A DNA stretch of 64,000 nucleotides from Macrostomum lignano. Its lineage: Eukaryota. The notes beneath the pieces were generated by a model. It was given only the letters and a program-made list of their open reading frames with translations. It was not told the origin of the DNA and did no database searches. Made by a program: the position numbers and the translations under genes. This document shows, one piece after another, positions 7,785 through 60,199 of the stretch. Numbering within the stretch: position 1 is the stretch's first letter; the number at the start of each line of letters is the position of its first letter. The stretch spans positions 496,001 to 560,000 of the forward strand of contig NIVC01000200.1 in assembly GCA_002269645.1 (NCBI GenBank). Direction: 5' to 3'.

Positions 7785-8300
7785 GATTAGGGGTGTCTGA
7801 GTGACAGATTAAGGGTGTCTGAGTGACAGACTAGAGGTGTCTGAGTGACAGACTAGAGGTGTCTGAGTGACAGACTAGAGGTGTCTGAGTGACAGACTAG
7901 AGGTGTCTGAGTAACAGACTAGAGGTGTCTGAGTGACAGATTAGGGGTGTCTGAGTGACAGATTAGGGGTGTCTGAGTGACAGATTAGGGGTGTCTGAGT
8001 GACAGATTAGGGGGTGTTTAAGTGACAGACTAGAGGTGTCTGAGTAACAGACTAGAGGTGTCTGAGTGACAGACTAGAGGTGTCTGAGTAACAGACTAGA
8101 GGTGTCTGAGTGACAGACTAGAGGTGTCTGAGTAACAGACTAGAGGTGTCTGAGTGACAGACTAGAGGTGTCTGAGTAACAGACTAGAGGTGTCTGAGTG
8201 ACAGACTAGAGGTGTCTGAGTAACAGACTAGAGGTGTCTGAGTGACAGACTAGAGGTGTCTGAGTAACAGACTAGAGGTGTCTGAGTGACAGACTAGGAG
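7785..8300. repeat. 22-bp minisatellite CTGAGTGACAGACTAGAGGTGT
   Basis: Fills MATH-BTB intron 2. GTGAC and GTAAC variants alternate over 8030-8290. Confidence 0.95.
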
Positions 8301-8385
8301 TGTCTGGGTTGCCAAGTGATTGACAGGGTTCGTAATTGGCAGAAAAGGGACTATTTAAAATCAACAAACCACACTGTACACTGAC

Positions 8386-8995: not shown

Positions 8996-9044
8996 CTGAG
9001 AGAGAGAGAGAGAGATTGGGTTTTAATACTTAGCTAGTAGTCTA

Positions 9045-23592: not shown

Positions 23593-24735
23593 TTAAATAC
23601 CCAGCAGGTTGTCAAGCGAACCAACACCCCCGACAAAATTCTCGTCGATCCATTCGTCCTGCTCGTGCTGCATAATGGGGGACGGAGTGCTCGGCAGGCC
23701 GATCATGAGGCCGTTCAAAGAGCCATTCAAGCTGGCAGGATTCTGATGCTGCTGATGCTGATCACCCATGCCACCGTGGTTGGACCCGTTGGTGAGCCAC
23801 CAGCTGGGCGGCGGCAGGGCCATGCCGTGCAGCGTCAAATCCAGCAAGCTGTCAGGATTCGACATGTCAAGCGCCGGCGTCGGGTCAGCCAGTACGCCGT
23901 CGTCATCCGGTTCAAACAGCCAGCGCTCGTCTTCGTCGAGATCTCCGACGCCGATGATGCCGCCTGGTAGAGCTACGAGAGAGTCGGCGCCAACGTTCGA
24001 CACGGCGGTGGCCGCTGTAGAGTCTTTGCCTGGCGTCAGTGAAACTGACGATGCTGTCAGAGTGGAAACTGCGACGGAGGCCGCCGCTGCGGCTGCCGTT
24101 GTCGCCGCTACAGAGACGGCCGTGGCTGCGGCGGCGGCGGCAGAGGCTGCGGCAGCTGCTGACGCTGTTGAAGCCGGCTGAGCCGTCAGGGTCGGGTCGC
24201 GGACTCGAGTCTCCACAGGGCCGCCGCTTAGAGCCATGGACACCCAGTGACCGCTGGAGTCGTGTCTGCCGCCACTGTCCGCATCGACGCTTCTTCCGTT
24301 GCCAAATCTGCTCTCATCCTGGATTCGCCTCAGCTTTGCCGCCGCCGGGTGGTCGCTTAGCAGCGGCGACTCGTCAATTTGTTCATCGTGACTGTGATGC
24401 CGTCGATTGTTGTTGCCATGGAAACCGGCGCCGCCGTTTACAAGAGGCGAATCGAAAAGATGCAATGGCGGTGGCGGCAGCTGATGATGATGCTGAGGCT
24501 GCGTTGAGCGTTGACGCTTTAACAATCCGTGAGATGAAGGCGACACCTGATGATGCTGGTACTGCTGCTGCTGCGCATTAGCCAGCTCAAACTGGCCAGT
24601 GTAGTCGGGATTCAGGCGCCAGTAGCCGCCGCAACTGCCGGCGCTTCCGCTGCCACCACGGCTGGCCGCTTCGTCTTTGCGTCGAGGTACGCGTTGGAAG
24701 CAACGATTGAGGGTCAGGTTGTAGCGGACGGCGCT
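23593..24735 (-). CDS. foxj1: FoxJ1-like gene exon 3 (recognition helix, wings, C-terminal region)
   Basis: Acceptor ctcccag|AGC GCC GTC CGC TAC AAC CTG ACC CTC AAT CGT TGC TTC gives SAVRYNLTLNRCFQRVPRRKDE...GGYWRLNP. In frame with ORF 23593..24546. LDLTLHGMALPPPSWW resembles the invertebrate FoxJ1 C-terminal motif. The joined CDS is 2274 nt (757 aa). Confidence 0.9.
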   Translation of the reverse strand, partial: SAVRYNLTLNRCFQRVPRRKDEAASRGGSGSAGSCGGYWRLNPDYTGQFELANAQQQQYQHHQVSPSSHGLLKRQRSTQPQHHHQLPPPPLHLFDSPLVNGGAGFHGNNNRRHHSHDEQIDESPLLSDHPAAAKLRRIQDESRFGNGRSVDADSGGRHDSSGHWVSMALSGGPVETRVRDPTLTAQPASTASAAAAASAAAAAATAVSVAATTAAAAAASVAVSTLTASSVSLTPGKDSTAATAVSNVGADSLVALPGGIIGVGDLDEDERWLFEPDDDGVLADPTPALDMSNPDSLLDLTLHGMALPPPSWWLTNGSNHGGMGDQHQQHQNPASLNGSLNGLMIGLPSTPSPIMQHEQDEWIDENFVGGVGSLDNLLGI

Positions 24736-24852
24736 CTGGGAGAGACGGGGATTGTTGGAGATAATTTTAGAGTCGGTAACTACTAGCTTTACAAGCTACT
24801 AGCTAGCCAACAAGTTGGGTTATTGGGATAAGTATGCGTTGTGTTGCCCGAT

Positions 24853-43707: not shown

Positions 43708-43839
43708 ATGTCAGTTGATGCAGAGAGTATTGAATCATTGATGCAAGCCATCACTGGGCTCAGCTTTTCTGAAGAAGAGATATCTAAGAATTACGAAAAA
43801 ATACCGCCGTATTTGAGACTGTATGAAGTGGAGACTGCT
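43708..43839 (+). CDS. ppp2r1a: Divergent PP2A scaffold subunit A-like (PR65/PPP2R1) HEAT protein, exon 1 of 10
   Basis: ATG TCA GTT...YLRLYEVETA|gtaagt. Joins in phase 0 to EKLRVVRTL, aligning to LRNEDVQLRLNSIKKL. This short exon is absent from the ORF track. Confidence 0.7.
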
Positions 43840-43969
43840 GTAAGTTGTTCCTCAATAAAATATTTATTAGATTAACCTATTTATCTTGAAGTATTGTTCG
43901 ACATTTCAAAGACACATGCGGGCATTGGCAAAACATCTCAATTAGTTTTGTAGTCAAGACTCAATAGTT

Positions 43970-45801
43970 CTGTGAGAATCGCTCAGGTAGACAAACAGTT
44001 CAGTGAGAATCGCTCAGGTAGATAAGAAGTCAGTAAGAATCGCTCAGGTAGACAAAGAGTTCAGTGAGAATCACTCAGGTAGACAAGAAGTCAGTGAGAA
44101 TCACTCAGGTAGACAAGAAGTCAGTGAGAATCACTCAGGTAGACAAGAAGTCAGTGAGAATCGCTCAGGTAGACAAGAAGTCAGTGAGAATCGCTCAGGT
44201 AGACAAGAAGTCAGTGAGAATCACTCAGGTAGACAAGAAGTCAGTGAGAATCGCTCAGGTAGACAAGAAGTCAGTGAGAATCGCTCAGGTAGACAAGAAG
44301 TCAGTGAGAATCACTCAGGTAGACAAGAGTTCAGTGAGAATCGCTCAGGTAGACAAGAAGTCAGTGAGAATCGCTCAGGTAGACAAGAAGTCAGTGAGAA
44401 TCACTCAGGTAGACAAGAGTTCAGTGAAAATCGCTCAGGTAGACAAGAAGTCAGTGAGAATCACTCAGGTAGACAAGAAGTCAGTGAGAATCGCTCAGGT
44501 AGACAAGAAGTCAGTGAGAATCGCTCAGGTAGACAAGAAGTCAGTGAGAATCACTCAGGTAGACAAGAAGTCAGTGAGAATCACTCAGGTAGACAAGAAG
44601 TCAGTGAGAATCGCTCAGGTAGACAAGAAGTCAGTGAGAATCACTCAGGTAGACAAGAAGTCAGTGAGAATCGCTCAGGTAGACAAGAAGTCAGTGAGAA
44701 TCACTCAGGTAGACAAGAGTTCAGTGAAAATCGCTCAGGTAGACAAGAAGTCAGTGAGAATCACTCAGGTAGACAAGAAGTCAGTGAGAATCGCTCAGGT
44801 AGACAAGAAGTCAGTGAGAATCACTCAGGTAGACAAGAGTTCAGTGAAAATCGCTCAGGTAGACAAGAAGTCAGTGAGAATCGCTCAGGTAGACAAGAAG
44901 TCAGTGAGAATCACTCAGGTAGACAAGAAGTCAGTGAGAATCGCTCAGGTAGACAAGAAGTCAGTGAGAATCGCTCAGGTAGACAAGAAGTCAGTGAGAA
45001 TCACTCAGGTAGACAAGAAGTCAGTGAGAATCGCTCAGGTAGACAAGAAGTCAGTGAGAATCGCTCAGGTAGACAAGAAGTCAGTGAGAATCACTCAGGT
45101 AGACAAGAAGTCAGTGAGAATCGCTCAGGTAGACAAGAAGTCAGGGAGAATCACTCAGGTAGACAAGAAGTCAGTGAAAATCACTCAGGTAGACAAGAAG
45201 TCAGGGAGAATCACTTAGGTAGACAAGAAGTCAGTGAGAATCACTCAGGTAGACAAGAAGTCAGGGAGAATCACTCAGGTAGACAAGAGTTCAGTGAAAA
45301 TCGCTCAGGTAGACAAGAAGTCAGTGAGAATCGCTCAGGTAGACAAGAAGTCAGGGAGAATCACTCAGGTAGACAAGAAGTCAGGGAGAATCACTCAGGT
45401 AGACAAGAGTTCAGTGAAAATCGCTCAGGTAGACAAGAAGTCAGTGAGAATCACTCAGGTAGACAAGAAGTCAGGGAGAATCACTCAGGTAGACAAGAGT
45501 TCAGTGAAAATCGCTCAGGTAGACAAGAAGTCAGTGAGAATCACTCAGGTAGACAAGAAGTCAGTGAGAATCGCTTAGGTAGACAAGAAGTCAGTGAGAA
45601 TCACTCAGGTAGACAAGAAGTCAGTGAGAATCGCTTAGGTAGACAAGAAGTCAGTGAGAATCACTCAGGTAGACAAGAAGTCAGTGAGAATCGCTCAGGT
45701 AGACAAGAAGTCAGTGAGAATCGCTCAGGTAGACAAGAAGTCAGTGAGAATCGCTCAGGTAGACAAGAGTTCAGTGAAAATCGCTCAGGTAGACAAGAAG
45801 T
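43970..45801. repeat. 30-bp minisatellite GTGAGAATC(A/G)CTCAGGTAGACAAGAAGTCA (PP2A-A intron 1)
   Basis: About 61 copies. It is the source of the 601-aa and 384-aa ORFs. Confidence 0.97.
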
Positions 45802-45867
45802 CCATTAGATTCATCATTTGTCCAATGACTCTACCGAAAGCAAATCTGCCGATCTTGCATCTACTAG

Positions 45868-45958
45868 GAGAAGCTTCGGGTTGTACGAACACTACCAGTC
45901 GTTGCTAGCAACCTAGGACCTTCTAAGGTGAAGGACGTACTAATACCTAAAATCGATG
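45868..45958 (+). CDS. ppp2r1a: PP2A-A-like exon 2
   Basis: Acceptor ctactag|GAG. EKLRVVRTLPVVASNLGPSKVKDVLIPKID G|gtaag (HEAT1). Confidence 0.82.
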
Positions 45959-46049
45959 GTAAGACTTAATTTTTTTGTCAATATATTTAATTCTGGTTTT
46001 GTATGGTAGCTGAGCTATATTAGTTACATTATTCAACAATAAATTGTAG

Positions 46050-46310
46050 AATTAATAACCGCGGCAATCAACAATGGTGAGGACGAGCTACTATTAGAAG
46101 TGTGCCGTCAGCTGGGCACGTTTCCTCATCTCATGGGCTCGGCCAATAATATTGTTAATCTAGTGCCGCCATTGGGTCGCGTTCTGTCCTCGGTTGAAGA
46201 GGTTGTTGTTGGCGAAGCGGCCGCTGACGCGCTGATCAAAGTAGTTGCCGAATTGTCCTCGACGCTGATTGAAACCAACTGTGTGCCGCTGATTAAAACC
46301 GTTTTCGATG
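46050..46310 (+). CDS. ppp2r1a: PP2A-A-like exon 3
   Basis: Acceptor ttgtag|AA. EDELLLEVCRQLGTF...LVPPLGRVLSSVEEVVV aligns to PP2A-A EDEVLLALAEQLGTF...LLPPLESLATVEETVV. Donor G|gtaaaa. Confidence 0.9.
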
Positions 46311-46419
46311 GTAAAAACCGTTTCAGTCTACTTATATCGCTTTCAATGAGTAATATAGTTTGTATTTTTAAAAGATTTAAACTGAGTATATGAAAGCAGT
46401 GGGTTGCTGTGTCATTATC

Positions 46420-47480
46420 TACTGCATTCTACCCTACCGACTAATGTTGTATACCACGACTACCATTAATACAAGCTACTCTACCGCTATCTTCTACTCT
46501 AATTACTATTTACCCTACCGCAATTCACTATACTCTATCTACCCTATCCTTACTACAAGCTACTCTACTTACTATCTACTCTACCATTTTCTTCACTACT
46601 TAATATCTTCCCTACCGCTATCTAATCTACTATCTACTCTGCCGTTATCTACTCCGCTTTCTATCGACCCTACTGTTATCTACTTAACTATCTACCCTAC
46701 GGCTATCGAGTTCACTTACTATCTACTTTACCGTTATCTGCTTACTGACTATCTTCCTTACCGATATCTACTCTACTTACTTTCCTACCTACCGCTATCT
46801 TCTCTACTCATATCTTCCTTACCGCTATCTACTATCGACCCTACCGCTATCTACTCTACTATCCATCTACCCTACCGCTATCGACCCTACCGCTAGCTAC
46901 TCTACTATCTACCCTACCGCTATGTACTTTATTATCTACCCTACCGCTATCTACTCTACTATCTACCCTACCGCTGTCTACTCTACTATCTACCCTACCG
47001 CTGTCTACTCTGCTATCTACCCTACCTACTCTACTACACTATCTACTCTACCCTAGCTATCTACTCTACTATATAACCTACCGCTATCTACTCTACCTTT
47101 TAACCTACCGATATCTACTCTACTATCTACCCTACCGCTATCTACTCTAGCTTCTACCCTACCGATATCTACTCTACTATCTACCCTACCGCTATCTACT
47201 CTACTATCTACCCTACCGCTATCTACTCTAGCTTCTACCCTACCGATATCTACTCTACTATCTACCCTACCGCTATCTACTCTACTATCTACCCTACCGC
47301 TATCTACTCTACTATCTACCCCACCGCTATCTACTCTACTTACTATCTAACCTACCGCTATCTATTCTACTATCTACCCTACCGCTATCTACTCTACTTA
47401 CTATCTACCCTACCGCTATCTACTCTACTTACTATCTACCCTACCGCTATCTACTCTACTTACTATCTACTCTTCCGCTC
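46420..47480. repeat. ~27-bp minisatellite CTACCCTACCGCTATCTACTCTACTAT, with a degenerate 5' half (intron 3)
   Basis: Homogeneous from about 46890, decayed upstream. Confidence 0.9.
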
Positions 47481-47556
47481 CCAGCCTCTTATCTCTGGTT
47501 ACTTACCCTCGTGTTAGTATTCCTTAATACAAAGCCGAACCCGTCGCGACCTTCAG

Positions 47557-47994
47557 ACGATCTCTACTGTTCGTCCCGCCGCGCTGGTTGCCGCCTAATC
47601 GTCCCCTGTTACGCCAAGATCAGCTCAAACGATATTCGCAGCGAATTAAAATCTCGCCTAATTAATGCAGCCAATCAAGAGGAAGAGATTCTGTTAGTGC
47701 GCGAGGCCGCTGTCACCCAGCTGGGGCTTCTGGCACAGTCGGCTAGCAAAGACCGGGCCGAAATCCTCGCCAGCTTGGTCACCCTGTCTAACGACAATCA
47801 TCGCGACATTCGAGCCGCCAGCGTTCGCTCCCTGCTAGACCTGGTTAAACTGTACGGCGAGAAGGAGCTGGAGTCCACCGTCTACCCTGTGTTGGAGCGC
47901 TACGCTGAGGATTCGCACAGGAATACCAGACAGAACTTTGCCGCTCATATTGCCGAGTTTCAGACTGTTTTCAATAAGATTGGAAAGCAGCTAG
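47557..47994 (+). CDS. ppp2r1a: PP2A-A-like exon 4
   Basis: Acceptor cttcag|[23 protein letters not shown] aligns to DWFTSRTSACGLFSVCYPR. Covers HEAT4-7. Donor G|gtgagt. Confidence 0.9.
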
Positions 47995-47999
47995 GTGAG

Positions 48000-48035
48000 T
48001 GTGTCTGTCTGTCTGTATGTGTCTGTCTGTCTTCC

Positions 48036-48100
<65 letters not shown>

Positions 48101-48103
48101 TCC

Positions 48104-48176
<73 letters not shown>

Positions 48177-48191
48177 TCCTGTCTGTCTTCC

Positions 48192-48232
<41 letters not shown>

Positions 48233-48235
48233 TCC

Positions 48236-48288
<53 letters not shown>

Positions 48289-48345
48289 TAGTGTCTGTCT
48301 GTCTGTCTGTCTGTCTGTATGTGTCTGTCTGTCTGTCTGTCTGTC
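48000..48345. repeat. (CTGT)n microsatellite (intron 4)
   Basis: Begins right after the GTGAGT donor. Confidence 0.96.
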
Positions 48346-48476
48346 CAGCAATGGGTAACAGTATGATTTCGTGAATATAAATAGATACTCGCTACTGATT
48401 AAGTAGTGTCACTTATTTATTGCTAAATACTACGTGGCGGATTTGCTAAATTGCTACAAAATCTGTCCATCGCCAG

Positions 48477-48796
48477 GCCCCCTGTTCATTTGCCTGTGGG
48501 AGGACAACGAGCCCGAGGTGCGCCGGGCGTCCGCAAAAAACCTGGTCGCCTTTGCGGACGCCTGCTCGAAAGACACATTGAACAGTCAGCTGGTGCCCAA
48601 GCTCAAGGAGCACCTGGTGAATGAGCACGACGATCGAGTCCGGCGGGAGATCATCGCGGAGACGGCCAGACTGTTGACTAAAATTCGTAAAGAGGATTCC
48701 ACTGAATTGGTAAAAACTGTAGTCAGCCTGATCACAGAGAGCGGCTCTGCCGGGGCCAAACAGGCCGTGTTCGACCATCTGAAGGACATCCTGGCT
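48477..48796 (+). CDS. ppp2r1a: PP2A-A-like exon 5
   Basis: Acceptor cgccag|GC. LWEDNEPEVRRASAKNL aligns to MKDCEAEVRAAASHKV. Donor GCT|gtgagt. Confidence 0.9.
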
Positions 48797-48889
48797 GTGA
48801 GTGACCTTCTAATGTCCTTAATATATCCTAATTATTGTAGAAAATATTTATTGTTTTTGTAAATCACTCACTGATTGCTCAAATTGGTG

Positions 48890-49945
48890 ATTAAGAATCG
48901 GTCAAATTGGGGATTAAGAATCGGTCAAATTGGGGATTAAGAATCGGTCAAATTGGGGATTAAGAATCGGTCAAATTGGGGATTAAGAATCGGTCAAATT
49001 GGGGATTAAGAATCGGTCAAATTGGGGATTAAGAATCGGTCAAATTGGGGATTAAGAATCGGTCAAATTGGGGATTAAAAATCGGTCAAATTGGGGATTA
49101 AAAATCGGTCAAATTGGGGATTAAGAATCGGTCAAATTGGGGATTAAGAATCAGTCAAATTGGGGATTAAGAATCGGTCAAATTAGGGATTAAGAATCGG
49201 TCAAATTGGGGATCAAGAATCGGTCAAATTGGGGATCAAGAATCGGTCAAATTGGGGATTAAAAATCGGTCAAATTGGGGATCAAGAATCGGTCAAATTG
49301 GGGATTAAGAATCGGTCAAATTGGGGATTAAGAATCGGTCAAATTGGGGATTAAGAATCGGTCAAATTGGGGATCAAGAATCGGTCAAATTGGGGATCAA
49401 GAATCGGTCAAATTGGGGATTAAAAATCGGTCAAATTGGGGATTAAGAATCGGTCCAATTGGGGATTAAGAATCGGTCAAATTGGGGATTAAGAATCGGT
49501 CAAATTGGGGATCAAGAATCGGTCAAATTGGGGATTAAGAATCGGTCAAATTGGGGATTAAGAATCGGTCAAATTGGGGATCAAGAATCGGTCAAATTGG
49601 GGATTAAGAATCGGTCAAATTGGGGATTAAGAATCGGTCAAATTGGGGATTAAGAATCGGTCAAATTGGGGATTAAGAATCGGTCAAATTGGGGATCAAG
49701 AATCGGTCAAATTGGGGATTAAGAATCGGTCAAATTGGGGATTAAGAATCGGTCAAATTGGGGATCAAGAATCGGTCAAATTGGGGATTAAGAATCGGTC
49801 AAATTGGGGATTAAGAATCGGTCAAATTGGGGATTAAGAATCGGTCAAATTGGGGATTAAGAATCGGTCAAATTGGGGATTAAGAATCGGTCAAATTGGG
49901 GATTAAGAATCGGTCAAATTGGGGATTAAGAATCGGTCAAATTGG
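48890..49945. repeat. 23-bp minisatellite AAGAATCGGTCAAATTGGGGAT(T/C) (intron 5)
   Basis: About 46 copies. Confidence 0.96.
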
Positions 49946-50041
49946 GGGTTAAAAGCTCGGACTATAAAGGAATTAAGATTAAGAATTACTCACAAATCAA
50001 ATTTCTAAATACGCCACCCGATCGCCTCACGCTATACTCAG

Positions 50042-50164
50042 GTCACCCCGCCGGCCGACCTGAAGAACACCATCATCCCCAGTCTGATGAAGCTCTACAG
50101 TGATCAGAACTGGCGAGTTCGTCTTGGCGTCGTCAAAAATCTGCCCGAATTAATGAGCGCCGTG
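50042..50164 (+). CDS. ppp2r1a: PP2A-A-like exon 6
   Basis: Acceptor actcag|GTC. IIPSLMKLYSDQNWRVRLGVVKNLP aligns to [25 protein letters not shown]. Donor GTG|gtaatt. Confidence 0.9.
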
Positions 50165-50329
50165 GTAATTATAATTTTATTACTTTTGGCTATAATTCTG
50201 CTTCTACTGAGTAGTAAGAAGAGCGCACACTCGCTTATTTTATTATTTTCATTTTCCTTGCGGGGGAGCGCCATATCCTTTCCTTTCAGCATCTCAGCTG
50301 GGGTCAGTTGCCCCTCCTTTCAATGTCTC

Positions 50330-51040
50330 GGACGGGGTCACTGCCCCTTCAGTGTCTTAGGTGGGGTCACTGCCCCTTCACTGTCTTAGGTGGGGTCACT
50401 GCCCCTTCAGTGTCTTAGGTGGGGTCACTGCCCCTTCAGTGTCTTAGGTGGGGTCACTGCCCCTTCAGTGTCTTAGGTGGGGTCACTGCCCCTTCAGTGT
50501 CTTAGGTGGGGTCACTGCCCCTTCAGTGTCTTAGGTGGGGTCACTGCCCCTTCAGTGTCTTAGGTGGGGTCACTGCCCCTTCAGTGTCTTAGGTGGGGTC
50601 ACTGCCCCTTTAGTGTCTTAGGTGGGGTCACTGCCCCTTCAGTGTCTTAGGTGGGGTCACTGCCCCTTCAGTGTCTTAGGTGGGGTCACTGCCCCTTCAG
50701 TGTCTTAGGTGGGGTCACTGCCCCTTCACTGTCTTAGGTGGGGTCACTGCCCCTTCAGTGTCTTAGGTGGGGTCACTGCCCCTTTAGTGTCTTAGGTGGG
50801 GTCACTGCCCCTTCAGTGTCTTAGGTGGGGTCACTGCCCCTTCAGTGTCTTAGGTGGGGTCACTGCCCCTTCAGTGTCTTAGGTGGGGTCACTGCCCCTT
50901 CAGTGTCTTAGGTGGGGTCACTGCCCCTTCAGTGTCTTAGGTGGGGTCACTGCCCCTTCAGTGTCTTAGGTGGGGTCACTGCCCCTTCAGTGTCTTAGGT
51001 GGGGTCACTGCCCCTTCACTGTCTTAGGTGGGGTCACTGC
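50330..51040. repeat. 29-bp minisatellite GGGGTCACTGCCCCTTCAGTGTCTTAGGT (intron 6)
   Basis: About 24 near-identical copies, periodicity 50401 to 50430. Confidence 0.96.
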
Positions 51041-51173
51041 CTCTTCCTTTAATGTCTCAGGTGGGTCACTGACCCCTGCCTTCAGTGCCTCAGCTCTGAG
51101 CCCTAACCTTATGAGCAGTCGCACAATTCAGTTAAAATGGCCAATTCCCATCATAAATCCGCTCTGCCCGCAG

Positions 51174-51389
51174 GACGAAGCCCAGATCAGCGGCACGCTG
51201 GTCCCGGCCTACATCTCCTGGCTAAAAGATTCCGCTAGCGAAATTCGCGACTCGGCCGCGCAAGCCCTTGGTAGAGTTGTAAAGGATCATAAAAGCCTGA
51301 CTGATGGCATCGCTAAAAGTGCCAGCCTAGCGGCCCTGGCCACCGAAGGCAACTATCAGTTTAGAAAAGTGTGGATCACTTGCGCCGTG
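51174..51389 (+). CDS. ppp2r1a: PP2A-A-like exon 7
   Basis: Acceptor ccgcag|GAC. WLKDSASEIRDSAAQAL aligns to WLVDHVYAIREAATSNL, followed by GNYQFRK. Donor GTG|gtaagt. Confidence 0.9.
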
Positions 51390-51769
51390 GTAAGTTCTCC
51401 TTATTATTGTTGTCGTTTTTAAAGAGCACAGTTTTTTAAGTGTTTTTTTGCTGCGTAGACACAGCGGCGCTTAGTAGTTACGATTTTCTTTGAAGGCTTT
51501 TTTGACGATGCTATTTTGCGCCGAGAGTTTCTTGTAGCTGGTTATTTTTTGTTTTCATTTCGTCTTTTCCTGATAGAGAAATTTGTGTCTGCCGCTGCGC
51601 AGTTTTATTTGTTAAACTAAGCTTAATTCGGTTCATGTGCGTTCCGGATGTCTGGTGCTGACGTCTGTTTGGGAAAATAAAAAATCCAACTTTCAATCGT
51701 TTATATTCCATAATCTCGAATCTAAAATCCCAATTCTACACATAAAATCCCCACCCAGAAACTGAGAAT

Positions 51770-52405
51770 CTTAATCCTCAAACCAGAAATCCCAAAGCTC
51801 AAACCGGTAGTCCCAATCCCCAAACCGGAAATCCCAATCCCCAGACCCGAAATCCCAATCCTCAAACCAGAAATCCCAAAGCTCAAACCAGAAATCCCAA
51901 TCCCCAAACCAGAAATCCCAATCCCCAAACCAGAAATCCCAAAGCAGAAATCCCAATCCTCAAACCAGAAATCCCAAAGCTCAAACCGGAAGTCCCAATC
52001 CTCAAACCAGAAATCCCAAAGCTCAAACCGGAAGTCCCAATTCTCAAACTAGAAATCCCAAAGCTCCAACCGGAAGTCCAAATCCCCAAACCAGAAATCT
52101 CAAAGCTCAAACCAGAAATCCCAATCCCCAAACCAGAAATCCCAAACCTCAAACCAGAAATCCCTATCCCCAAACCAGAAATCCCAATCCCCAAACCAGA
52201 AATCCCAATCCCCAAACTAGAAATCCCAATCCCCAAACCAGAAATTTCAAAGCTCAAACCAGAAATCCCAATCCCCAAACCAGAAATCCCAAAGCTCAAA
52301 CCAGAAATCCCAATCCCCAAAGCAGAAATCCCAAAGCAGAAATCCCAAGGCTCAAACCAGAAATCCCAATCCCCAAAGCAGAAACCCCAAAGCAGAAATC
52401 CCAAT
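51770..52405. repeat. 21-bp minisatellite CCAGAAATCCCAA(TCCC/AGCT)CAAA (intron 7)
   Basis: About 30 copies. Confidence 0.94.
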
Positions 52406-52524
52406 CCTCAAGGAAAAAGGACTTGACGTCAAAGGATAATTGCTGTGCTGACAGATTAGCCATGTTTCAGACTAATTAGTATCCTGAAAAATTATTTTAC
52501 GGTTTTTACTTTTCCATCTTGCAG

Positions 52525-52664
52525 GAACTGATGGACAAGGGCGCCGCTTCATGCATCCCGGTTCTGGTGCCGCAGCTGATGAAGCTGTCATCGGATAAGG
52601 TGCCCAACGTTCGTTTAGCCGTTGTCAAGGCTCTGGTTCGGCTGGCAACGCATTTCGACGCAAA
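52525..52664 (+). CDS. ppp2r1a: PP2A-A-like exon 8
   Basis: Acceptor ttgcag|GAA. LMKLSSDKVPNVRLAVVKAL aligns to DPVANVRFNVAKSL. Donor AA|gttagt is phase 2. Confidence 0.9.
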
Positions 52665-52759
52665 GTTAGTTGAAATGTTTTTGTTTGCATTTTTTAGACA
52701 AAAAGGGGTTTTTAGGCAATGTAGCTTTGGTTAATAGTTAAAGTAGCGCTGATCAGTAG

Positions 52760-53315
52760 ACAAAGTAGAGTCGGCTGGTAGGCAGAGTAGAGTTGATGCG
52801 TAGGCAAAGGTAGAGTCGGTAGGTTGGCTAAGGTAGAGTCGGTTGGTAGGCAGAGTAGAGTTGATACGTAGGCAAAGGTAGAGTCGGTAGGTTGGCAAAG
52901 GTAGAGTCGGTTGGTAGGCAGAGTAGAGTTGATACGTAGGCAAAGGTAGAGTCGGTAGGTTGGCAAAGGTAGAGTCGGTTGGTAGGCAGAGTAGAGTTGA
53001 TACGTAGGCAAAGGTAGAGTCGGTAGGTTGGCAAAGGTAGAGTCGGTTGGTAGGCAAGGTAGAGTCGGTTGGTAGGCAAAGTAGAGTTGGTATGTAGGCA
53101 AGGTAGATTCGGTAGGTAGGCAAGGTAGAGTCGGTAGGTAGGCAAGGTAGAGTCGGTAGGTAGGTAGGCAAGGTAGGGTCGGTAGGTAGGCAAGGTAGAG
53201 TCGGTAGGTAGGTAGGCAAGGTAGGGTCGGTAGGTAGGCAAGGTAGAGTCGGTAGGTAGGTAGGCAAGGTAGGGTCGGTAGGTAGGCAAGGTAGAGGCGG
53301 TAGGTAGGCAAGGTG
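52760..53315. repeat. G-rich compound minisatellite (AGGCAAGGTAGAGTCGGTAGGT variants; intron 8)
   Basis: Direct reading, with variable unit length. Confidence 0.9.
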
Positions 53316-53427
53316 TTGAGTCGCTATATGTAAACAAAGTTAGTCATCCAGTTTACAAAGATAAGGACATTTGTGAATATGTTATCTATTCGTATTAAAA
53401 TAGATAATCTCACTGCCTTTTTTCCAG

Positions 53428-53519
53428 CATCATTAAAAAGGACATTATCAGTCCGTTAGTCGAACTGTCAAAAGATGAAGACGCAGACGTCAGATTCTAT
53501 GCCGAAGAAGCTGTTAGCA
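53428..53519 (+). CDS. ppp2r1a: PP2A-A-like exon 9
   Basis: Acceptor ttccag|C. SPLVELSKDEDADVRFYAEEAV aligns to HEAT15 [23 protein letters not shown]. Donor A|gtgagt is phase 1. Confidence 0.9.
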
Positions 53520-53869
53520 GTGAGTTGTCATTGATTGTTTCTATTAGAGTTTATTGCGATGCAATCTTGTCCAGCTTTTTGCTTGCTTTTCAACTTGTCT
53601 TTGATTGATTGATTTTCACCAATATAAGAAACTGTTTGATTTGCAGCTTGCCAAATTATTATTTTTAAAAAATCAGAACTCTTGTATTAAAAATTTACGC
53701 AAGTCCGTCGTCTTAGGGAATTTCCAACTTGCCGTTTCCCGGAACTCCAGTGTCCGAAGATTCCATTTTATCAAACTGAGTGAAATCCCTCAGTTTTAAC
53801 CTTCAAACAATCTATAAAAACATTGATTTTTTGCATCGTACGAGGAATCTGTGTGTACTATCTGTCAAT

Positions 53870-54315
53870 TCATTAATCCATCAATTAATCTATCAACTAA
53901 TCAATCAATCGTCAATCAATCAATCAACCAAGCAATCAATCGTCAATCAATCAGTCAGTCAATCAATTGATCAATTAATCATTCAATCAATCAGTCAGTC
54001 AATCAATCAATCATTCGATCAATCAGTCAGTCAATCACTCAGTCAATCAATGAATCAATTGTTCAAAAAATCATTCAATCAATCAGTCAGTCAATCAATC
54101 ATTCAATCAATGAATCAATTGATCAAAAAATCATTCAATCAATCAGTCAGTCAATCAATCAGTCAGTCAATCAATCATTCAATCAATGAATCAATTGATC
54201 AAAAAATCATTCAATCAATCAGTCAGTCAATCAATCAATCATTCAATCAATGAATCAATTGATCAAAAAATCATTCAATCAATCAGTCTGTCAATCAATC
54301 AGTCAATCAATCAAT
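53870..54315. repeat. (TCAA/TCAG)n microsatellite with higher-order block (intron 9)
   Basis: Direct reading. The ATGAATCAATTGATCAAAAAATCATTC block repeats. Confidence 0.92.
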
Positions 54316-54343
54316 TACTCAGTAACGTTGTTTTCTTGTCAAG

Positions 54344-54732
54344 TTTCGGCTTTGCGTCCAGTTTCGTTTAAACTTGACGGCGGCATGCCCTCTCAATCCC
54401 TATATCGCTATTTTGTTCGCATCCCTTCTTCACTCGCCGTCGCAGAGCAAATTTATAACAAACACGTCAAAGATGCCAAGCCAGTGCCGCGTAGTGCCGC
54501 GGGCGGCGGCGAAGACGCAAAATCCTCTTCGGCCTCCTCTTTCGGAGCCGCCTCCGCCGCCGCCTCCGCGGCGTCTGGGTCGCAGAAATCTTCGACATCG
54601 GGGTCGGCGGCAAAGCCAGCGTCTCCGGCTGATAAAAAAGCTGCCGCAACAGCGGGTGCTGGCAAATCTGGCGGCAAGGGTGAGGATGCAGCTGCTCCGC
54701 TAACGGAGCACACCGGAAATGAGAATTTATAA
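54344..54732 (+). CDS. ppp2r1a: PP2A-A-like exon 10 (non-canonical C-terminal extension)
   Basis: Acceptor ttgtcaag|TT is phase 1 and in frame with ORF 54250..54732. GC-rich coding-like composition, stop TAA then AT-rich sequence with aataaa at about 54736. The joined CDS is 2202 nt (733 aa). Confidence 0.72.
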
Positions 54733-54874
54733 TGAATAAAAATCTATATAATTTAAGCAGATAAACAACGTTATGATATTAACAGCGTTAAAACCCAAAA
54801 GTAAAATGATAATAATAGTACTGGTAGCGGATGTGAAATTAAAAGTTTTATTTATAACAATAATAATACCGGAT

Positions 54875-55325
54875 TTGGAATGATTCTAGTGAAACCGGAA
54901 GTTGTCTAACAATGATAAAAAAGATTTAGAATGATTCTAGTGAAACCGGAAGTTGTCTGACAATGATAAAAAAGATTTAGAATGATTCTAGTGAAACCGG
55001 AAGTTGTCTATCAATAATAAACATTAAATTTGTAATGATTCTGGTGAAACCGGAAGTTGTCTATCAAAGATAAAAATTAGATTTGGAATGATTCTAGTGA
55101 AACCGGAAGTTGTCTATCAATGATAAAAAATAGATTTGGAATGATTCTGGTGAAACCGGAAGTTGTCTATCAATGATAAACATTATATTTGGAATGGTTC
55201 TAGTGAAACCGGAAGTTGTCTATCAATGATAAACATTAGATTTGTAATGATTCTAGTGAAACCGGAAGTTGTCTATCAATGATAATCATTAGATTTATGA
55301 TGATTCTAGTGCAACCGGAAGTTGC
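54875..55325. repeat. 51-53-bp tandem repeat, 9 copies, each with AACCGGAAGTTG
   Basis: ATGATTCT(A/G)GTGAAACCGGAAGTTGTCTA recurs at about 54893, 54944, 54995, 55048, 55101, 55154, 55207, 55260 and 55313. Confidence 0.93.
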
Positions 55326-55944
55326 ATAATAATGATAGTAATAAATTTGGTAGGATAAGACAATGATAAGTTTACTTTGTATCGGTCCAGTGAAAAACAA
55401 TTCGTATTAAAAGAATTGTTCAGAGTGCAGATACAACTTACTAACAACGATTCTATTAAAGAAGAAAATTGTCTTTAAAAGAAAAAAGCATTTACCGCGA
55501 TGAGCTTGAAACGATTTCGCAGCGCAATGACAACTAGGAAATGCAAACAAAGTAGAATTCGCGTATTCAAGTGGATAAATGTTTGTTTAGCTAGACTAGA
55601 CATCCGGAATTGCTTGATTGACAGTTTTAAGTTTGATGGTTTGTCAGTCTGCTTTTCGGGTGAAGGGCTGCGAAGTTTATTTTAGGTATAAATAGTGTTG
55701 TGTCTCGGAGCATTACTGGTGTGCTCATGGGTTAACATTTTTGCCGGACATCTGCAGCACTTAACCTGTGTTTACTTTTACTTAATAAATAGATTTTCAT
55801 AGATTAGAGCATCATTTTGTCTTTATATTAATTCCATTTTTATGCATTAACTTGTCACCAATATAACCAAGCTTTCTGTTGTAAATTACTCGGAGTTTGT
55901 GTTTAGTTGTAATTATTTGCTGTTCCTTTGCTGTGAATATATGT

Positions 55945-56272
<328 letters not shown>

Positions 56273-57124
56273 TCATCTACCCATTTAACTAAGTAGTGCT
56301 GTCTTACATTCAATTGCTATAATTAAGTATATAATTTTTAATACCCACAACAAAGAATATAATTTTTACTTTCATTAAACTCATACTAACACACCTGGCC
56401 TGTTTCAGATTTAAAGAAATAATCAGGATTCAATCAGCTTCACCGTCGATGGCCTCAGTAAGACAGATTTTAATTTGCGCGGACAGTAAAGCATCACATT
56501 ATGAAATTCCCATTAGCTGATTAATGGTGAATCGTAATCAGCTAACAGAAGCTCTGCTTGGTTATTAATTGGCCTGATTATGTTGTTAGTAGAAACGTAA
56601 AACTCTCTTTTATTTTATATTTTCTACATTCATATAAACTCGTGTTTTTTGTTAATTGTTTTTCATATGAATTTTGTACTAAAAAATTGAAATTCTCTTT
56701 CTAATACAAGATACTTTGCAGTATAAAGTTTATCGAAGTGAAATTGTTACTATACATAATTAATTGAGCTTTCTGGTAACTAAAGACAATTAAACTTGCA
56801 TCTACACTATTGTTTGCCCTTTTCACTTAGAGGCGAGGGGCTGTTTGCTGCCCATTACTGCCCATTCCGCCGACTCCCCTGAGCAGGCACACAAGCGCGC
56901 GGATACGTACGCAGTCATTACACACAGGCACTCACACAGGAGTGTACAGCGGCCCTAACTTTATTTATTTTTAGCCATGTACACTTCACTGTGCCTTGGA
57001 GGGTTGGCCCTAAAGGCCGTTAATTGCACGAGCAGAGCCAAATAAAGATTCCAATTTAGACTGCACTTGAAATCGAGCCTGGGCCGCTGGGCTATTTATA
57101 ATAATCCTATTCCACCATTTAAAA

Positions 57125-58787: not shown

Positions 58788-60085
58788 ATGTCTAGCCAAA
58801 CTGAAAGCAGCAAACAAGCAAGCGGCAGCGCAGCCGGCTGCGATGATTGTCAAGATGCCGAGGATGACGAAGCGTCTTCATCCTCCTCTTCTTCGTCTTC
58901 TTCAACTTCGTCATCCCTAGCGGGATCGCCTGCTACTGTGGGCGCGGCCGCAGTTGCTTCCGGCGGTCGAGGCGTCGATCATCAGCAGGGCCTGTCGGAC
59001 GCGTTGGAGCATTTTCGACGCGACTGGCGTCAGGAGCTGGAATCGCGTCGTGGTCGACAGCAGCCGCAACAGCAGCAGCAACAGCAGCAACAGCAGCAAC
59101 AGCAAAAGCAACAACAATTGAAGCCAATCGTGGATTCATTGCGTCATCTTCAACTGCAGAAAGTTGACAACGGTAGCGACGACGAATTTGATGAAGATGA
59201 TGACGACAATGATGAAGTTGAAGAAGAAACGTTTGTCAAAGAAATCAAAGATGAACAAAGAGAAGATGATAAAGACTCTGATGATGACAATAGCTCTGCC
59301 GCTAATTTGACCAGCCTGCCAGCTGAATGCCTGCTATTAATAGCCCAATGGATTGTTGGCGGCAATAACCAGCTGGACTATCGGAGCCTGTGCCGTTTAG
59401 CCAGCGTGTCGCGCGTGTTCCACCGGCTGGCTCACGATCGCCTGCTCTGGTCGATGATCGGTCGACGGCTATGGAGCATCGATTGCGCTACTAGGGAGCT
59501 GGTGTTGAGCAGAGCTCAGCCGCTATTCGACGGCGTCTACATTGGCAGGTGTAGCTACGTTAGAATTGGCGAACGCGACATTGGCCAGTGCTATCGACCC
59601 TGCTTTCTAATCGAATATTATCGCTATCTGAGATTCCATCCGCCGGCTAGAGGCCAAGCTCTGCGGGGTCGAGTCGAATTATTGACTTCCAATGACCCGC
59701 CGGAGCTTCTACTGCCGAACTTGTCGTTGCAGTCGAGCTTGCTGACAGGCGAATACGAGTACCAGCTTCCTGGCAGCCACTCGGAGCCCTGCCTGCTGCG
59801 CTGCGTCTTCCGCACCCGACAGACTGGCGGCGGAGGCAGCGGCGTTGGCAAACGTGGGGCCGCTTCGTCGGCCGCCTGGGAACGGAGTGTGGATTATTTC
59901 TGCGATTTCCAAGTGAAGCCCAGCGCTTCCATTGCTGCGCTGCAGGAGGAGGCAGCGGCGCCGGCGCCGGCTGGGCCCGGGGATGACGTTGAGGATGGCG
60001 CATCGAAAGCTGCCAGACGGAGGAGTCGCTCGGCAACGAGGTGGAACTGCCGGATTCACTGGCTGCGTTATGAGATGGCCATTCG
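58788..60085 (+). CDS. fbxo9: F-box only protein 9 (FBXO9/Hrt3)-like, first coding exon; 3' exon(s) not located
   Basis: LEHFRRDWRQEL, F-box LPAECLLLIAQWIV...DYRSLCRLASVSRVF...LW, and FDGVYIGRCSYVRIGE...IEYYRYLRFHP match FBXO9 motifs. Donor CG|GTGAGT at 60085/60086. Confidence 0.88.
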
Positions 60086-60199
60086 GTGAGTGCGGCTGTT
60101 CTGGGTCTTGATGGCAGAGGTGGCTTGATGCTCCTCAAGTCTCCCGGGTCTTGTTGGCGTAGGTGGCTTGATGGTCATCAAGTCTCCCAGAAACTCAGT

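What the first reader, a model, noticed from the sequence alone, without database searches (positions are those of the whole stretch)
47685..47930. PP2A scaffold paralog whose B-subunit-binding residues are replaced while catalytic-subunit contacts are kept
Seen, by manual colinear alignment to human PPP2R1A: HEAT5 DTPMVRRAA becomes EILLVREAA (P179L, M180L, R183E equivalents), and HEAT7 EDKSWRVRY becomes EDSHRNTRQ (S256H, W257R, R258N equivalents). C-terminal loops are retained: WRVR (HEAT11), NYxxR (HEAT13), DKVPNVR (HEAT14) and DxDVRFYA (HEAT15). Known: P179, R183, S256 and W257 contact regulatory B subunits and are human cancer or neurodevelopmental mutation hotspots, HEAT11-15 bind the C subunit, and canonical PP2A-A is normally highly conserved across animals. 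Inference: a lineage-specific scaffold that assembles a non-canonical phosphatase holoenzyme or sequesters the C subunit.
Basis: partly seen in the sequence, partly recalled or inferred. Interest (0 to 1): 0.72.

Follow-up and report, generated by a model that had tools for sequence, protein, structure and literature searches.

The report
Divergent flatworm PP2A scaffold paralog
This flatworm (Macrostomum lignano) gene is an intact, strongly selected but very divergent second copy of the PP2A phosphatase scaffold that flatworms keep beside the normal one; it keeps the loops that hold the catalytic subunit and has a rewritten regulatory-subunit ridge, so it probably builds a flatworm-specific phosphatase complex.

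Summary
Window 47685-47711 encodes EILLVREAA and 47907-47933 encodes EDSHRNTRQ, inside exon 4 of an 11-exon + strand gene (43708-56422) of Macrostomum lignano. The 608-aa product aligns colinearly with all 15 HEAT repeats of human PR65/PPP2R1A at 26% identity. Its AlphaFold model matches PR65 structures (TM 0.85). Eight of its 9 introns sit at canonical animal PR65 intron positions.

It is a paralog. M. lignano also has a canonical PR65 that is 69% identical to human. It is not PPP4R1-like (17% identity; 53 versus 194 bits).

It is not species-specific. Orthologs occur in trematodes and cestodes, each beside a canonical copy, and nowhere else among 1.84 billion representative proteins.

In all 12 family members examined the B-subunit contacts are replaced (W140L, M180L, R183E/A/S, D218R, W257R, R258N/D). 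W417, R418, N494, Y495, R498 and N535 in HEAT11-15 are invariant. P179 and S256 are lost only in Macrostomum. dN/dS is about 0.06-0.11.

Binding to the catalytic subunit and to a new partner is inferred, not shown. I found no literature on this family. I rate it a new variant of a known kind, of moderate interest.

The parts
43708..43839 (+). Exon 1, from the ATG. Encodes a family-specific N-terminal extension (MSVDAESIESLMQAITGLSFSEEEISKNYEKIPPYLRLYEVETA).
   Evidence: GT donor. Identical to the N-terminus of UniRef A0A1I8ICP4 (P0001). The intron position is shared with canonical PR65 genes (human residue 27, phase 0).
45868..45958 (+). Exon 2, 91 nt, second half of HEAT1 (EKLRVVRTLPVVASNLGPSKVKDVLIPKID).
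   Evidence: AG/GT junctions. A 91-nt exon 2 is also present in the Actinia and Pinctada canonical PR65 genes and in the S. bovis divergent gene.
46050..46310 (+). Exon 3, HEAT2 to the start of HEAT4. Holds the retained acidic loops GEDELLL (46076-46096) and VEEVVVG (46193-46213).
47557..47994 (+). Exon 4, HEAT4-7, which contains the finding. It holds the HEAT4 loop DDDLYCSSR (W140L), the HEAT5 loop EILLVREAA (47685-47711), the HEAT6 loop NDNHRDIRA (47790-47816, D218R) and the HEAT7 loop EDSHRNTRQ (47907-47933, W257R/R258N).
48477..48796 (+). Exon 5, HEAT8-10. Holds two of the three repeats with the most conserved positions in the family (HEAT8, HEAT9), plus HEAT10: EDNEPEVRRASA (48500-48535), VPKLKEHLVNEHDDRVRRE (48593-48649) and the family-specific KQxVF in HEAT10.
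   Evidence: (16 and 17 positions conserved at 80% or more in HEAT8 and HEAT9 of the divergent family).
50042..50164 (+). Exon 6, HEAT11, with NWRVRL (50108-50125). W417 and R418 equivalents are invariant in 12/12 family members.
51174..51389 (+). Exon 7, HEAT12-13, with GNYQFRK (51348-51368). N494, Y495 and R498 equivalents are invariant.
   Evidence: R498L abolishes C binding in human A-alpha (PMC10531206).
52525..52664 (+). Exon 8, HEAT14, with DKVPNVRL (52594-52617).
   Evidence: The corresponding exon is 143 nt in the canonical Actinia and Pinctada genes.
53428..53519 (+). Exon 9, 92 nt, HEAT15, with DEDADVRFYA (53474-53503).
   Evidence: A 92-nt exon sits at the same place in the Actinia canonical gene and in paralog P0002.
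54446..54679 (+). Optional in-frame cassette exon of 234 nt, encoding an Ala/Ser/Gly/Lys-rich low-complexity insert. It is included in the UniProt model but has no counterpart in the paralog gene or in any ortholog.
   Evidence: Predicted disordered (pLDDT about 30 for residues 615-682).
56409..56422 (+). Last exon (..LKK, then stop TAA). It gives the family's conserved C-terminus.
   Evidence: A 14-nt terminal exon is also present in the P0002 gene.

Best explanation
SHOWN. The gene encodes a member of a flatworm-restricted, ancient and selectively maintained paralog family of the PP2A scaffold (PR65/A subunit). The family arose by DNA-level duplication of an intron-rich animal-type PR65 gene and then diverged to about 27% identity. 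It kept the 15-HEAT horseshoe.

INFERRED, step 1. The ridge loops of HEAT11-15 keep the residues canonical PR65 uses for the catalytic subunit. The protein therefore still docks a PP2A-type catalytic subunit (PP2Ac, or possibly PP4c or PP6c).

INFERRED, step 2. The HEAT4-7 ridge that contacts B55, B56 and PR72 has been replaced by a different residue set (L140, L180, R218, R257, N/D258) that is itself conserved within the family. HEAT8-10 carries new family-specific conserved motifs. The protein therefore cannot assemble the standard B55, B56 or PR72 holoenzymes in the canonical way. Instead it presents a different, conserved surface to a partner that is still unknown.

The result would be a flatworm-specific phosphatase complex working alongside canonical PP2A.
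For: Homology and fold:
- Colinear over 576 aa with human PR65 alpha, E 9e-59.
- PDB best hits are only PR65.
- Pfam PPP2R1A-like_HEAT scores above its cutoff.
- The AF2 model has pLDDT 84.6. The top 31 Foldseek PDB hits are all PR65, the best about 0.85 target-normalised TM, rmsd 3.2-3.7 A.

Descent:
- Eight of 9 introns sit at the same column and phase as introns of cnidarian or mollusc canonical PR65 genes.

Paralogy:
- Canonical PR65 exists in M. lignano (P0224) and in every neodermatan species checked.

Distribution:
- Profile searches find the family only in Platyhelminthes (33 hits).
- In 1.84 billion representatives there is a gap from 419 bits down to about 220 bits, where canonical PR65 begins.

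Selection:
- The gene is intact.
- dN/dS is 0.06 (P0002 versus P0003) and 0.11 (window versus P0002).
- The clade has 100% bootstrap support and its internal topology follows the species tree.

Residue pattern:
- W140L, M180L, D218R and W257R occur in 12/12 members. R183 becomes E, A or S, and R258 becomes N or D, in 12/12.
- W417, R418, R420, R459, N494, Y495, R498, N535 and R537 are kept in 12/12.
- HEAT7 and HEAT11 carry the same [SK]WRVR motif in canonical PR65. Only the HEAT11 copy survives, which serves as an internal control.

Literature:
- These residues contact B56, B55 and PR70 (PMC7862067).
- R183E, R183A, P179A and W257A are defective in B binding (PMC6859563).
- HR11-15 loops bind C (PMC7862067).
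- R498L loses C binding (PMC10531206).
Against: - No interaction was tested, and multimer modelling was not available.
- Several of the retained HEAT11-15 residues (the Arg of each 'VR') are generic HEAT-consensus positions that are also kept in HEAT4-8. Once these are excluded the contrast rests on small numbers: 9/14 against 2/14 (p 0.018), or against 6/21 (p 0.08).
- The HEAT12 loop is not retained (V455, Y456, E460), and F538 is replaced in most members.
- HEAT2-3 acidic loop residues, including E64, are kept, so some B-type contact remains possible (striatin via HR1-3, or part of the B56 contact).
- No candidate partner or matching divergent catalytic subunit was identified.
- The distance tree cannot place the origin of the clade because of its long branch.
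- No expression data were found.
Confidence: 0.55

Rival explanations
1. The protein is a catalytic-subunit sink or core-dimer scaffold. It binds C through HEAT11-15 but recruits no regulatory subunit. It would buffer or hold the C subunit, or act as a B-less A-C dimer, much like dominant-negative human A-alpha hotspot mutants.
For: It shares the evidence for retained HEAT11-15 loops and lost B contacts. Human P179, R183, W257 and R258 variants lose B binding, and some act as dominant negatives (PMC7862067; PMC6859563).
Against: The replaced ridge is not degenerate. L140, L180, R218 and R257 are invariant in 12/12 members across Macrostomum, trematodes and cestodes. HEAT8-9 are among the three repeats with the most conserved positions in the family (16-17 positions at 80% or more). 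That pattern is expected for a surface that binds something, not for one released from constraint.
Confidence: 0.15
2. The protein is a HEAT scaffold that has left phosphatase biology. The HEAT11-15 motifs are retained only for folding, or as slowly decaying ancestral signal, and it binds neither C nor B subunits.
For: Overall identity to PR65 is only 26-29%, and HEAT10 is 8% identical. Many retained residues are HEAT-consensus positions. The HEAT12 loop has diverged.
Against: Non-consensus ridge residues W417, R418, N494, Y495, N535, D572 and D574 are invariant in all 12 members. The equivalent W257 and R258 in the sequence-identical HEAT7 motif were replaced in all 12. A purely structural constraint should treat the two motifs alike.
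Confidence: 0.15
3. The protein is a scaffold for one retained B-type family, for example striatin/STRIPAK, which binds HR1-3. It would be a dedicated A subunit for one class of holoenzyme rather than for a new partner.
For: The HEAT2-3 loops (E62/D63/E64, E100/E101) are retained in 12/12 members. Striatin binding needs HR1-3. Human A-alpha variants that lose B55 binding show increased STRN3 binding (PMC7862067).
Against: HEAT1 is strongly diverged and carries a family-specific N-terminal extension. There is no direct test. New conserved motifs in HEAT8-10 are not explained by this model.
Confidence: 0.12
4. It is the organism's ordinary PP2A-A subunit, a PPP4R1/PPP4R4-type subunit, or a decaying duplicate.
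For: Databases name several orthologs 'PP2A 65 kDa regulatory subunit A alpha isoform'. The M. lignano genome holds near-identical copies of the paralog gene (Mlig017842 g1, g3, g4).
Against: A canonical PR65 is present in M. lignano and in all neodermatans checked. Similarity to PPP4R1 is far weaker than to PR65. The reading frame is intact, all splice sites are canonical, dN/dS is 0.06-0.11, and the gene is conserved from Macrostomum to tapeworms.
Confidence: 0.02

Closest known systems
PR65 / PP2A scaffold subunit A (PPP2R1A, PPP2R1B; Drosophila Pp2A-29B)
   Same: It has 15 colinear HEAT repeats and about 600 aa. The predicted horseshoe fold matches (TM 0.85). Intron positions are shared (8 of 9). 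The HEAT11-15 ridge motifs WRVRL, NYxxR, VPNVR and DxDVxFxA are in register.
   Different: It is only 26-29% identical to PR65, whereas canonical orthologs, including the flatworms' own, are 47-82% identical to human. The B-contact residues W140, M180, R183, D218, W257 and R258 are all replaced. It has a family-specific N-terminal extension and new conserved motifs in HEAT8-10. It coexists with a canonical copy.
Human disease variants of A-alpha (P179R/L, R182W, R183W/Q, S256F, W257G, R258H)
   Same: Substitutions fall at the same ridge positions of HEAT5 and HEAT7. The expected consequence is loss or re-biasing of B-subunit binding with the C-binding domain intact (PMC7862067; PMC6859563).
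   Different: Here the changes are fixed, multiple, conserved across a phylum and under purifying selection, in a separate gene. They are an evolved alternative surface, not a lesion.
PPP4R1 (PP4 regulatory subunit 1)
   Same: It is a HEAT-repeat PPP regulatory subunit whose C-terminal repeats resemble PR65 HEAT10-15. It is a precedent for a PR65-like scaffold serving another PP2A-like catalytic subunit.
   Different: PPP4R1 is 950 aa with a long non-HEAT insert. It shares only 17-18% identity with the flatworm protein, and the only sizeable BLAST match (53.5 bits) covers 214 C-terminal residues. The flatworm protein is less like PPP4R1 than canonical PR65 is (22%).

Membership tests
PR65 / PP2A-A scaffold (homologous family) | About 590 aa made of 15 tandem HEAT repeats, alignable end to end | tested here: met
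   One colinear BLASTP HSP covers residues 46-604 against human 28-586, E 9e-59. The MAFFT alignment covers all 15 repeats. Most of the top 150 representative hits (about 110) are single colinear stretches to proteins of about 580 aa.
PR65 / PP2A-A scaffold (homologous family) | Pfam PPP2R1A-like HEAT repeat (PF22646) above the gathering score | tested here: met
   P0002 scores 58.5 bits against a cutoff of 27. The window exon 4-5 peptide scores 33.1 bits.
PR65 / PP2A-A scaffold (homologous family) | Horseshoe alpha-solenoid fold of PR65 | tested here: met
   The AF2 model has pLDDT 84.6 and pTM 0.73. The top 31 Foldseek PDB hits are all PR65 chains, the best at target-normalised TM 0.85-0.86 and rmsd 3.2-3.7 A. 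The next fold (CAND1, SF3B1) scores TM 0.3-0.46.
PR65 / PP2A-A scaffold (homologous family) | Gene structure inherited from the animal PR65 gene | tested here: met
   Eight of 9 introns share column and phase with Actinia and/or Pinctada canonical PR65 introns. This includes the 91-nt exon 2 and the 140/143-nt and 92-nt exons near the 3' end.
Canonical PP2A A subunit (ortholog of PPP2R1A/B) | High conservation: canonical orthologs are 47-82% identical to human, including those of flatworms | tested here: not met
   The window protein is 26.4% identical to human and 27.2% to M. lignano's own canonical PR65. The canonical M. lignano copy is 68.6% identical to human.
Canonical PP2A A subunit (ortholog of PPP2R1A/B) | B-subunit contact residues on the HEAT4-7 ridge (W140, F141, T178, P179, M180, R183, D218, W257, R258) | tested here: not met
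   These residues are conserved in 23-26 of 26 canonical sequences (F141 20/26; D218 as D or E). In the window protein they are L, Y, I, L, L, E, R, R, N. W140L, M180L, D218R and W257R occur in 12/12 family members. The contact list comes from PMC7862067.
Canonical PP2A A subunit (ortholog of PPP2R1A/B) | C-subunit-binding ridge of HEAT11-15 | tested here: met
   This was tested at sequence level only. W417, R418, R420, R459, N494, Y495, R498, N535, R537, D572 and D574 are kept in 12/12 members. The HEAT12 loop and F538 are not kept.
Canonical PP2A A subunit (ortholog of PPP2R1A/B) | Physical binding of the C subunit and of B55, B56, PR72 and striatin | not testable with these tools
   No interaction data exist and no multimer prediction was available.
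PPP4R1 / PPP4R4-type subunits | Closer in sequence and architecture to PPP4R1 than to PR65 | tested here: not met
   P0002 against human PPP4R1 (sequence verified exact) gives 53.5 bits, E 2e-11, over 214 aa. Against PR65 alpha it gives 194 bits over 576 aa. Identity is 17-18% against 26-29%. PPP4R4 was not tested directly.
Flatworm divergent PR65-like clade (unnamed; automatic names only) | Monophyly with Schistosoma, Echinococcus and other members, and shared clade-specific residues (L140, R218, R257, EDNE.E.RR, KQ.VF, NWRVRLGVV) | tested here: met
   The clade has 100% bootstrap support. The window gene shares 7 of 9 introns with the S. bovis member and 9 of 9 with M. lignano paralog P0002.

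The most novel reading that the evidence does not exclude
Flatworms possess a second, phylum-specific class of PP2A-like holoenzyme. This PR65-derived scaffold would dock a PPP catalytic subunit (PP2Ac, PP4c, PP6c or a divergent flatworm PPP) through the conserved HEAT11-15 ridge. It would recruit a regulatory subunit unrelated to B55, B56, PR72 or striatin through the rewritten, conserved HEAT4-10 ridge. Because the family is present in schistosomes and tapeworms and absent from their hosts, it would be a parasite-specific phosphatase module.
Probability: 0.3. Interest if true: 0.75.

Novelty: new variant of a known kind. Interest (0 to 1): 0.55.

Why it matters
PR65 is among the most conserved signalling scaffolds in eukaryotes. 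The known extra copies that I am aware of (mammalian A-alpha/A-beta, the three Arabidopsis genes) are near-identical isoforms; this statement rests on my own knowledge.

A paralog that has been kept since before Macrostomum and the parasitic flatworms diverged is an evolutionary counterpart of the human hotspot mutations. It holds on to the catalytic-subunit ridge while every major B55, B56 and PR72 contact has been swapped for another conserved residue. It asks directly what a PR65 with a different B-face binds.

It is testable in a tractable, free-living, transgenic model (M. lignano). Orthologs exist in schistosomes, liver flukes and tapeworms but not in their hosts, which gives it possible value as a parasite-specific module.

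It also flags an annotation problem. Many orthologs are labelled as the ordinary 'PP2A 65 kDa regulatory subunit A alpha isoform'.

Tried and rejected
- **First gene model.** My first model skipped exon 2 and gave a phase clash between exon 1 and the next exon. P0001 resolved this by revealing the 91-nt exon at 45868-45958.
- **Reading exon 10 through to its own stop (..GNENL*).** I rejected this in favour of the spliced ..LKK end, which matches all relatives. Skipping exon 10 is also in frame.
- **Distance trees (NJ, 200 bootstraps), with and without PPP4R1.** They give a robust clade but cannot place it because of the long branch. The split 'divergent + PPP4R1' has 37.5% support. The intron-position test was used instead.
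- **Whole-repeat identity.** It does not show a clear C-terminal bias. Only the ridge loops do.
- **Literature searches for a flatworm PR65 paralog or for M. lignano PPP2R1A.** Nothing was found.
- **Supplements of the M. lignano transcriptome and genome papers.** No PPP2R1A entry was found, but the files are truncated as stored, so this is uninformative.
- **Explicit list of A-C contact residues.** I could not obtain one from the held papers. I therefore used 'HR11-15 loops' and the R498L result.
- **'TOG domain-containing protein'.** This UniProt name is an automatic label. Pfam's TOG model scores below its cutoff (19.6 against 27.1).
Full report
**What is in the window.**

The window is genomic DNA of the free-living flatworm Macrostomum lignano. 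My spliced translation is about 99% identical to UniRef A0A1I8ICP4_9PLAT (P0001, 682 aa).

The finding lies in exon 4 of an 11-exon gene on the + strand:
- 43708-43839
- 45868-45958
- 46050-46310
- 47557-47994
- 48477-48796
- 50042-50164
- 51174-51389
- 52525-52664
- 53428-53519
- an optional cassette exon, 54446-54679
- 56409-56422

All junctions are AG/GT. Without the cassette the product is 608 aa and ends in NLKK, like its relatives. Every intron holds its own tandem-repeat array.

**Check of the observation.**

EILLVREAA is encoded at 47685-47711 and EDSHRNTRQ at 47907-47933.

HMMER against PDB chains, MAFFT and BLASTP all agree on one colinear alignment. BLASTP gives 29% identity over 576 aa, E 9e-59.

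In that alignment the two peptides sit opposite DDTPMVRRAA (HEAT5) and EDKSWRVRY (HEAT7). The C-terminal motifs are also present, in exons 6-9: NWRVRL, GNYQFRK, DKVPNVRL and DEDADVRFYA.

**What the protein is.**

PDB sequence search returns only PR65 chains as significant hits. Pfam PPP2R1A-like_HEAT scores above its gathering cutoff.

An AlphaFold2 model built from a 25-sequence alignment has mean pLDDT 84.6 and pTM 0.73. It shows about 30 helices and a disordered tail that corresponds to the cassette exon.

Foldseek against the PDB puts 31 PR65 chains first, with target-normalised TM up to 0.85-0.86 and rmsd 3.2-3.7 A over about 573 columns. The next folds (CAND1, SF3B1) reach TM 0.3-0.46.

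**Paralog, not ortholog, and not PPP4R1.**

A profile of flatworm canonical PR65 proteins recovered canonical copies in Schistosoma, Trichobilharzia, Paragonimus, Calicophoron, Echinococcus, Taenia, Hymenolepis, Mesocestoides and Schistocephalus. It also recovered one in M. lignano (P0224, UniRef A0A1I8H4X3).

The P0224 model is a fused double copy. Its residues 298-885 form a standard PR65 with DDTPMVRR, DDKSWRVRY and EDSKWRVRLAII, and are 68.6% identical to human. The window protein is 26.4% identical to human and 27.2% to this canonical copy.

It is 17-18% identical to the flatworm proteins. That is less than its 22% identity to canonical PR65.

**Distribution.**

A HMMER profile search of 1.84 billion representative proteins found, above canonical PR65 (about 220 bits), only the following:
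- the M. lignano sequences
- two Macrostomum-like fragments (P0006, P0065)
- a Schistosoma cluster (P0007, 419 bits; P0024)
- one 3,120-aa multi-HEAT protein (P0008, 235 bits, 12 separate stretches), which is not a colinear PR65-like match

The top-150 hits I read were PR65-like (12 inspected, about 45).

A profile search with names returned 33 hits, all from Platyhelminthes:
- trematodes: Schistosoma, Trichobilharzia, Heterobilharzia, Calicophoron, Dicrocoelium, Opisthorchis, Paragonimus, Fasciola, Fasciolopsis
- cestodes: Schistocephalus, Spirometra, Echinococcus, Taenia, Hymenolepis, Rodentolepis, Anoplocephala, Mesocestoides

Their names are automatic: 'unnamed protein product', 'TOG domain-containing', and in several cases 'PP2A 65 kDa regulatory subunit A alpha isoform'. 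No planarian sequence appeared. I cannot tell whether that reflects loss or database coverage.

Three literature searches found no description of the family.

**Origin.**

Distance trees give the family 100% bootstrap support, and its internal branching follows the species tree. The family sits on a long branch outside all sampled eukaryotic PR65 proteins, and its attachment point is unresolved.

Gene structure is more informative. I mapped exons exactly for six genes:
- canonical PR65 of the sea anemone Actinia (20 exons)
- canonical PR65 of the oyster Pinctada
- canonical PR65 of S. mansoni
- the divergent gene of S. bovis
- M. lignano paralog P0002
- the window gene

Eight of the window gene's 9 introns coincide in alignment column and phase with an intron of the cnidarian and/or mollusc canonical gene. 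In human residue/phase terms these are 27/0, 57/1, 138/1, 394/0, 435/0, 507/0, 554/2 and 585/1. Seven of 9 are shared with the S. bovis divergent gene and 9 of 9 with P0002.

There are about 1770 possible positions and 23 canonical introns, so chance sharing of 8 is of the order of 1e-14 (my arithmetic).

The family therefore descends by DNA-level duplication from an intron-rich, animal-type PR65 gene. Whether the duplication is flatworm-specific or older with losses elsewhere is not settled.

**Selection.**

Nei-Gojobori estimates give dN/dS of 0.06 for P0002 versus P0003 and 0.11-0.12 for the window gene versus either. dS is near saturation, so these are rough values, but they are clearly far below 1.

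Macrostomum and neodermatan members are about 35% identical, with many invariant positions. This is a maintained gene, not a decaying duplicate.

**The residue pattern across the family.**

I compared 26 canonical PR65 proteins (animals plus diverse eukaryotes) with 12 family members.

Residues reported to contact B56-gamma1, B55-alpha or PR70 (PMC7862067) behave as follows:
- W140 becomes L in 12/12.
- M180 becomes L in 12/12.
- R183 becomes E, A or S in 12/12.
- D218 becomes R in 12/12.
- W257 becomes R in 12/12.
- R258 becomes N or D in 12/12.
- T178 becomes I or V.
- P179 and S256 are replaced only in Macrostomum.

In HEAT11-15 the family keeps W417, R418, R420, R459, N494, Y495, R498, N535, R537, D572 and D574 in 12/12.

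HEAT7 and HEAT11 carry the same [SK]WRVR motif in canonical proteins. The family kept it in HEAT11 and rewrote it in HEAT7.

Counting loop positions conserved in canonical proteins gives these figures:
- HEAT1-7 keeps 16/36 and HEAT11-15 keeps 19/25 (p 0.019).
- Without the generic HEAT Asp/Val/Arg positions, HEAT4-7 keeps 2/14 and HEAT11-15 keeps 9/14 (p 0.018).
- On the same basis HEAT1-7 keeps 6/21 (p 0.08).

Not everything fits neatly:
- The HEAT12 loop and F538 are not kept.
- The acidic HEAT2-3 loops, including E64, are kept.
- Whole-repeat identities show no simple N-to-C gradient.

Within the family, the repeats with the most conserved positions are HEAT8 and HEAT9 (EDNE.E.RR; L.P.L.EL..E..ERVR.E) together with HEAT11 (16, 17 and 17 positions). 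HEAT10 has a new KQ.VF motif.

**Mechanism.**

Shown:
- homology, fold, paralogy, phylum-wide conservation and purifying selection
- a B-face whose replacement residues are themselves conserved
- retained HEAT11-15 ridge residues

Established elsewhere:
- HR1-7 loops bind B subunits and HR11-15 loops bind C (PMC7862067).
- P179A, R183A, R183E and W257A are defective in B binding (PMC6859563).
- R498L loses C binding (PMC10531206).

Inferred:
- The protein still docks a PP2A-type catalytic subunit.
- It cannot form standard B55, B56 or PR72 holoenzymes.
- It uses its conserved alternative ridge (HEAT4-10) for a different partner.

I put about 0.55 on this full statement. I put well above 0.9 on 'divergent, functional, flatworm-restricted PR65 paralog'.

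The rivals are listed with their tests:
- a B-less C-subunit sink
- a scaffold that has left phosphatase biology
- a dedicated striatin-type scaffold

**Novelty and interest.**

The proteins are in databases under automatic names, but I found no recognition of them as a distinct family. A 27%-identity PR65 paralog, kept beside the canonical gene in both free-living and parasitic flatworms and carrying a rewritten B-face, is a new variant of a known kind.

It is of moderate interest to PP2A biology as a natural counterpart of the disease hotspots. It also matters to flatworm and parasite biology, because it is absent from hosts and testable in M. lignano.

Noticed in passing
window 43972-56271 (introns of the gene): Every intron carries its own distinct tandem array. 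Examples: a 30-bp unit x61 (43972-45802), 27-bp x34, TGTC x87, 23-bp x47, 29-bp x25, 21-bp x30, 22/68-bp x24, AATC x111, 53-bp x8.6 and TATC x81. Several give long spurious ORFs.
   Followed up: partly
window 54446-54679: This is a 234-nt in-frame cassette exon encoding an Ala/Ser/Gly/Lys-rich, predicted-disordered insert just before the last 4 codons. It is included in the UniProt model P0001. It is absent from the paralog gene (L002) and from all orthologs. Skipping it restores the family C-terminus ..NLKK. Whether it is really spliced in is unknown.
   Followed up: partly
window about 48490 (codon 313 of the product) and 54446-54679: The window copy differs from UniProt P0001. It has Cys instead of Arg in FI[C/R]LWEDNEP, where Arg is present in all other family members. 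It also has a small indel and a G/E change in the cassette exon. It is probably another allele or homeologous copy in this polyploid genome.
   Followed up: no
L005 (S. mansoni canonical PR65 gene, NC_031499.1): The canonical schistosome PR65 gene has only 6 introns, and none coincides with any intron of the cnidarian or mollusc canonical genes or of the divergent genes. The divergent S. bovis gene keeps 9 of 13 ancestral positions. So the 'canonical' protein sits in a restructured gene and the 'divergent' protein in a conservative one. Alignment around the large schistosome insertions could contribute to this result.
   Followed up: no
P0224 (UniRef A0A1I8H4X3, M. lignano canonical PR65): The 885-aa database model is a fusion. 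A scrambled partial copy (residues 1-297) is followed by a complete canonical PR65 (298-885). This is probably a tandem duplicate or a mis-assembly merged by the gene caller.
   Followed up: no
window 58788-60089 (+); 23596-24795 (-); 8275-9033 (-); 5327-6094 (-): Neighbouring genes are: a polyQ-containing F-box protein (F-box-like plus FBO_C), a forkhead-domain exon, a BTB/POZ-domain exon, and an amiloride-sensitive sodium channel (ASC/DEG-ENaC) exon. No link to the scaffold gene is apparent.
   Followed up: partly
M. lignano transcript RNA1509_58604 (supplement of PMC5173321): A divergent PPP-family catalytic-like transcript appears in a differential-expression table of the neoblast/germline study. 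Its best human hit is PPP2CB at only e=2e-13, and it has a flatworm-specific UniRef50 match. This is a lead for a possible non-canonical catalytic partner. It was not examined further.
   Followed up: no
Orthologs P0155, P0195, P0198 (Schistosoma rodhaini, Fasciolopsis, Fasciola): Some trematode gene models of this family are named 'SOCS box domain-containing' or 'Ankyrin repeat-containing'. This suggests that a neighbouring ankyrin/SOCS-box gene has been fused into the models, or is a conserved neighbour.
   Followed up: no
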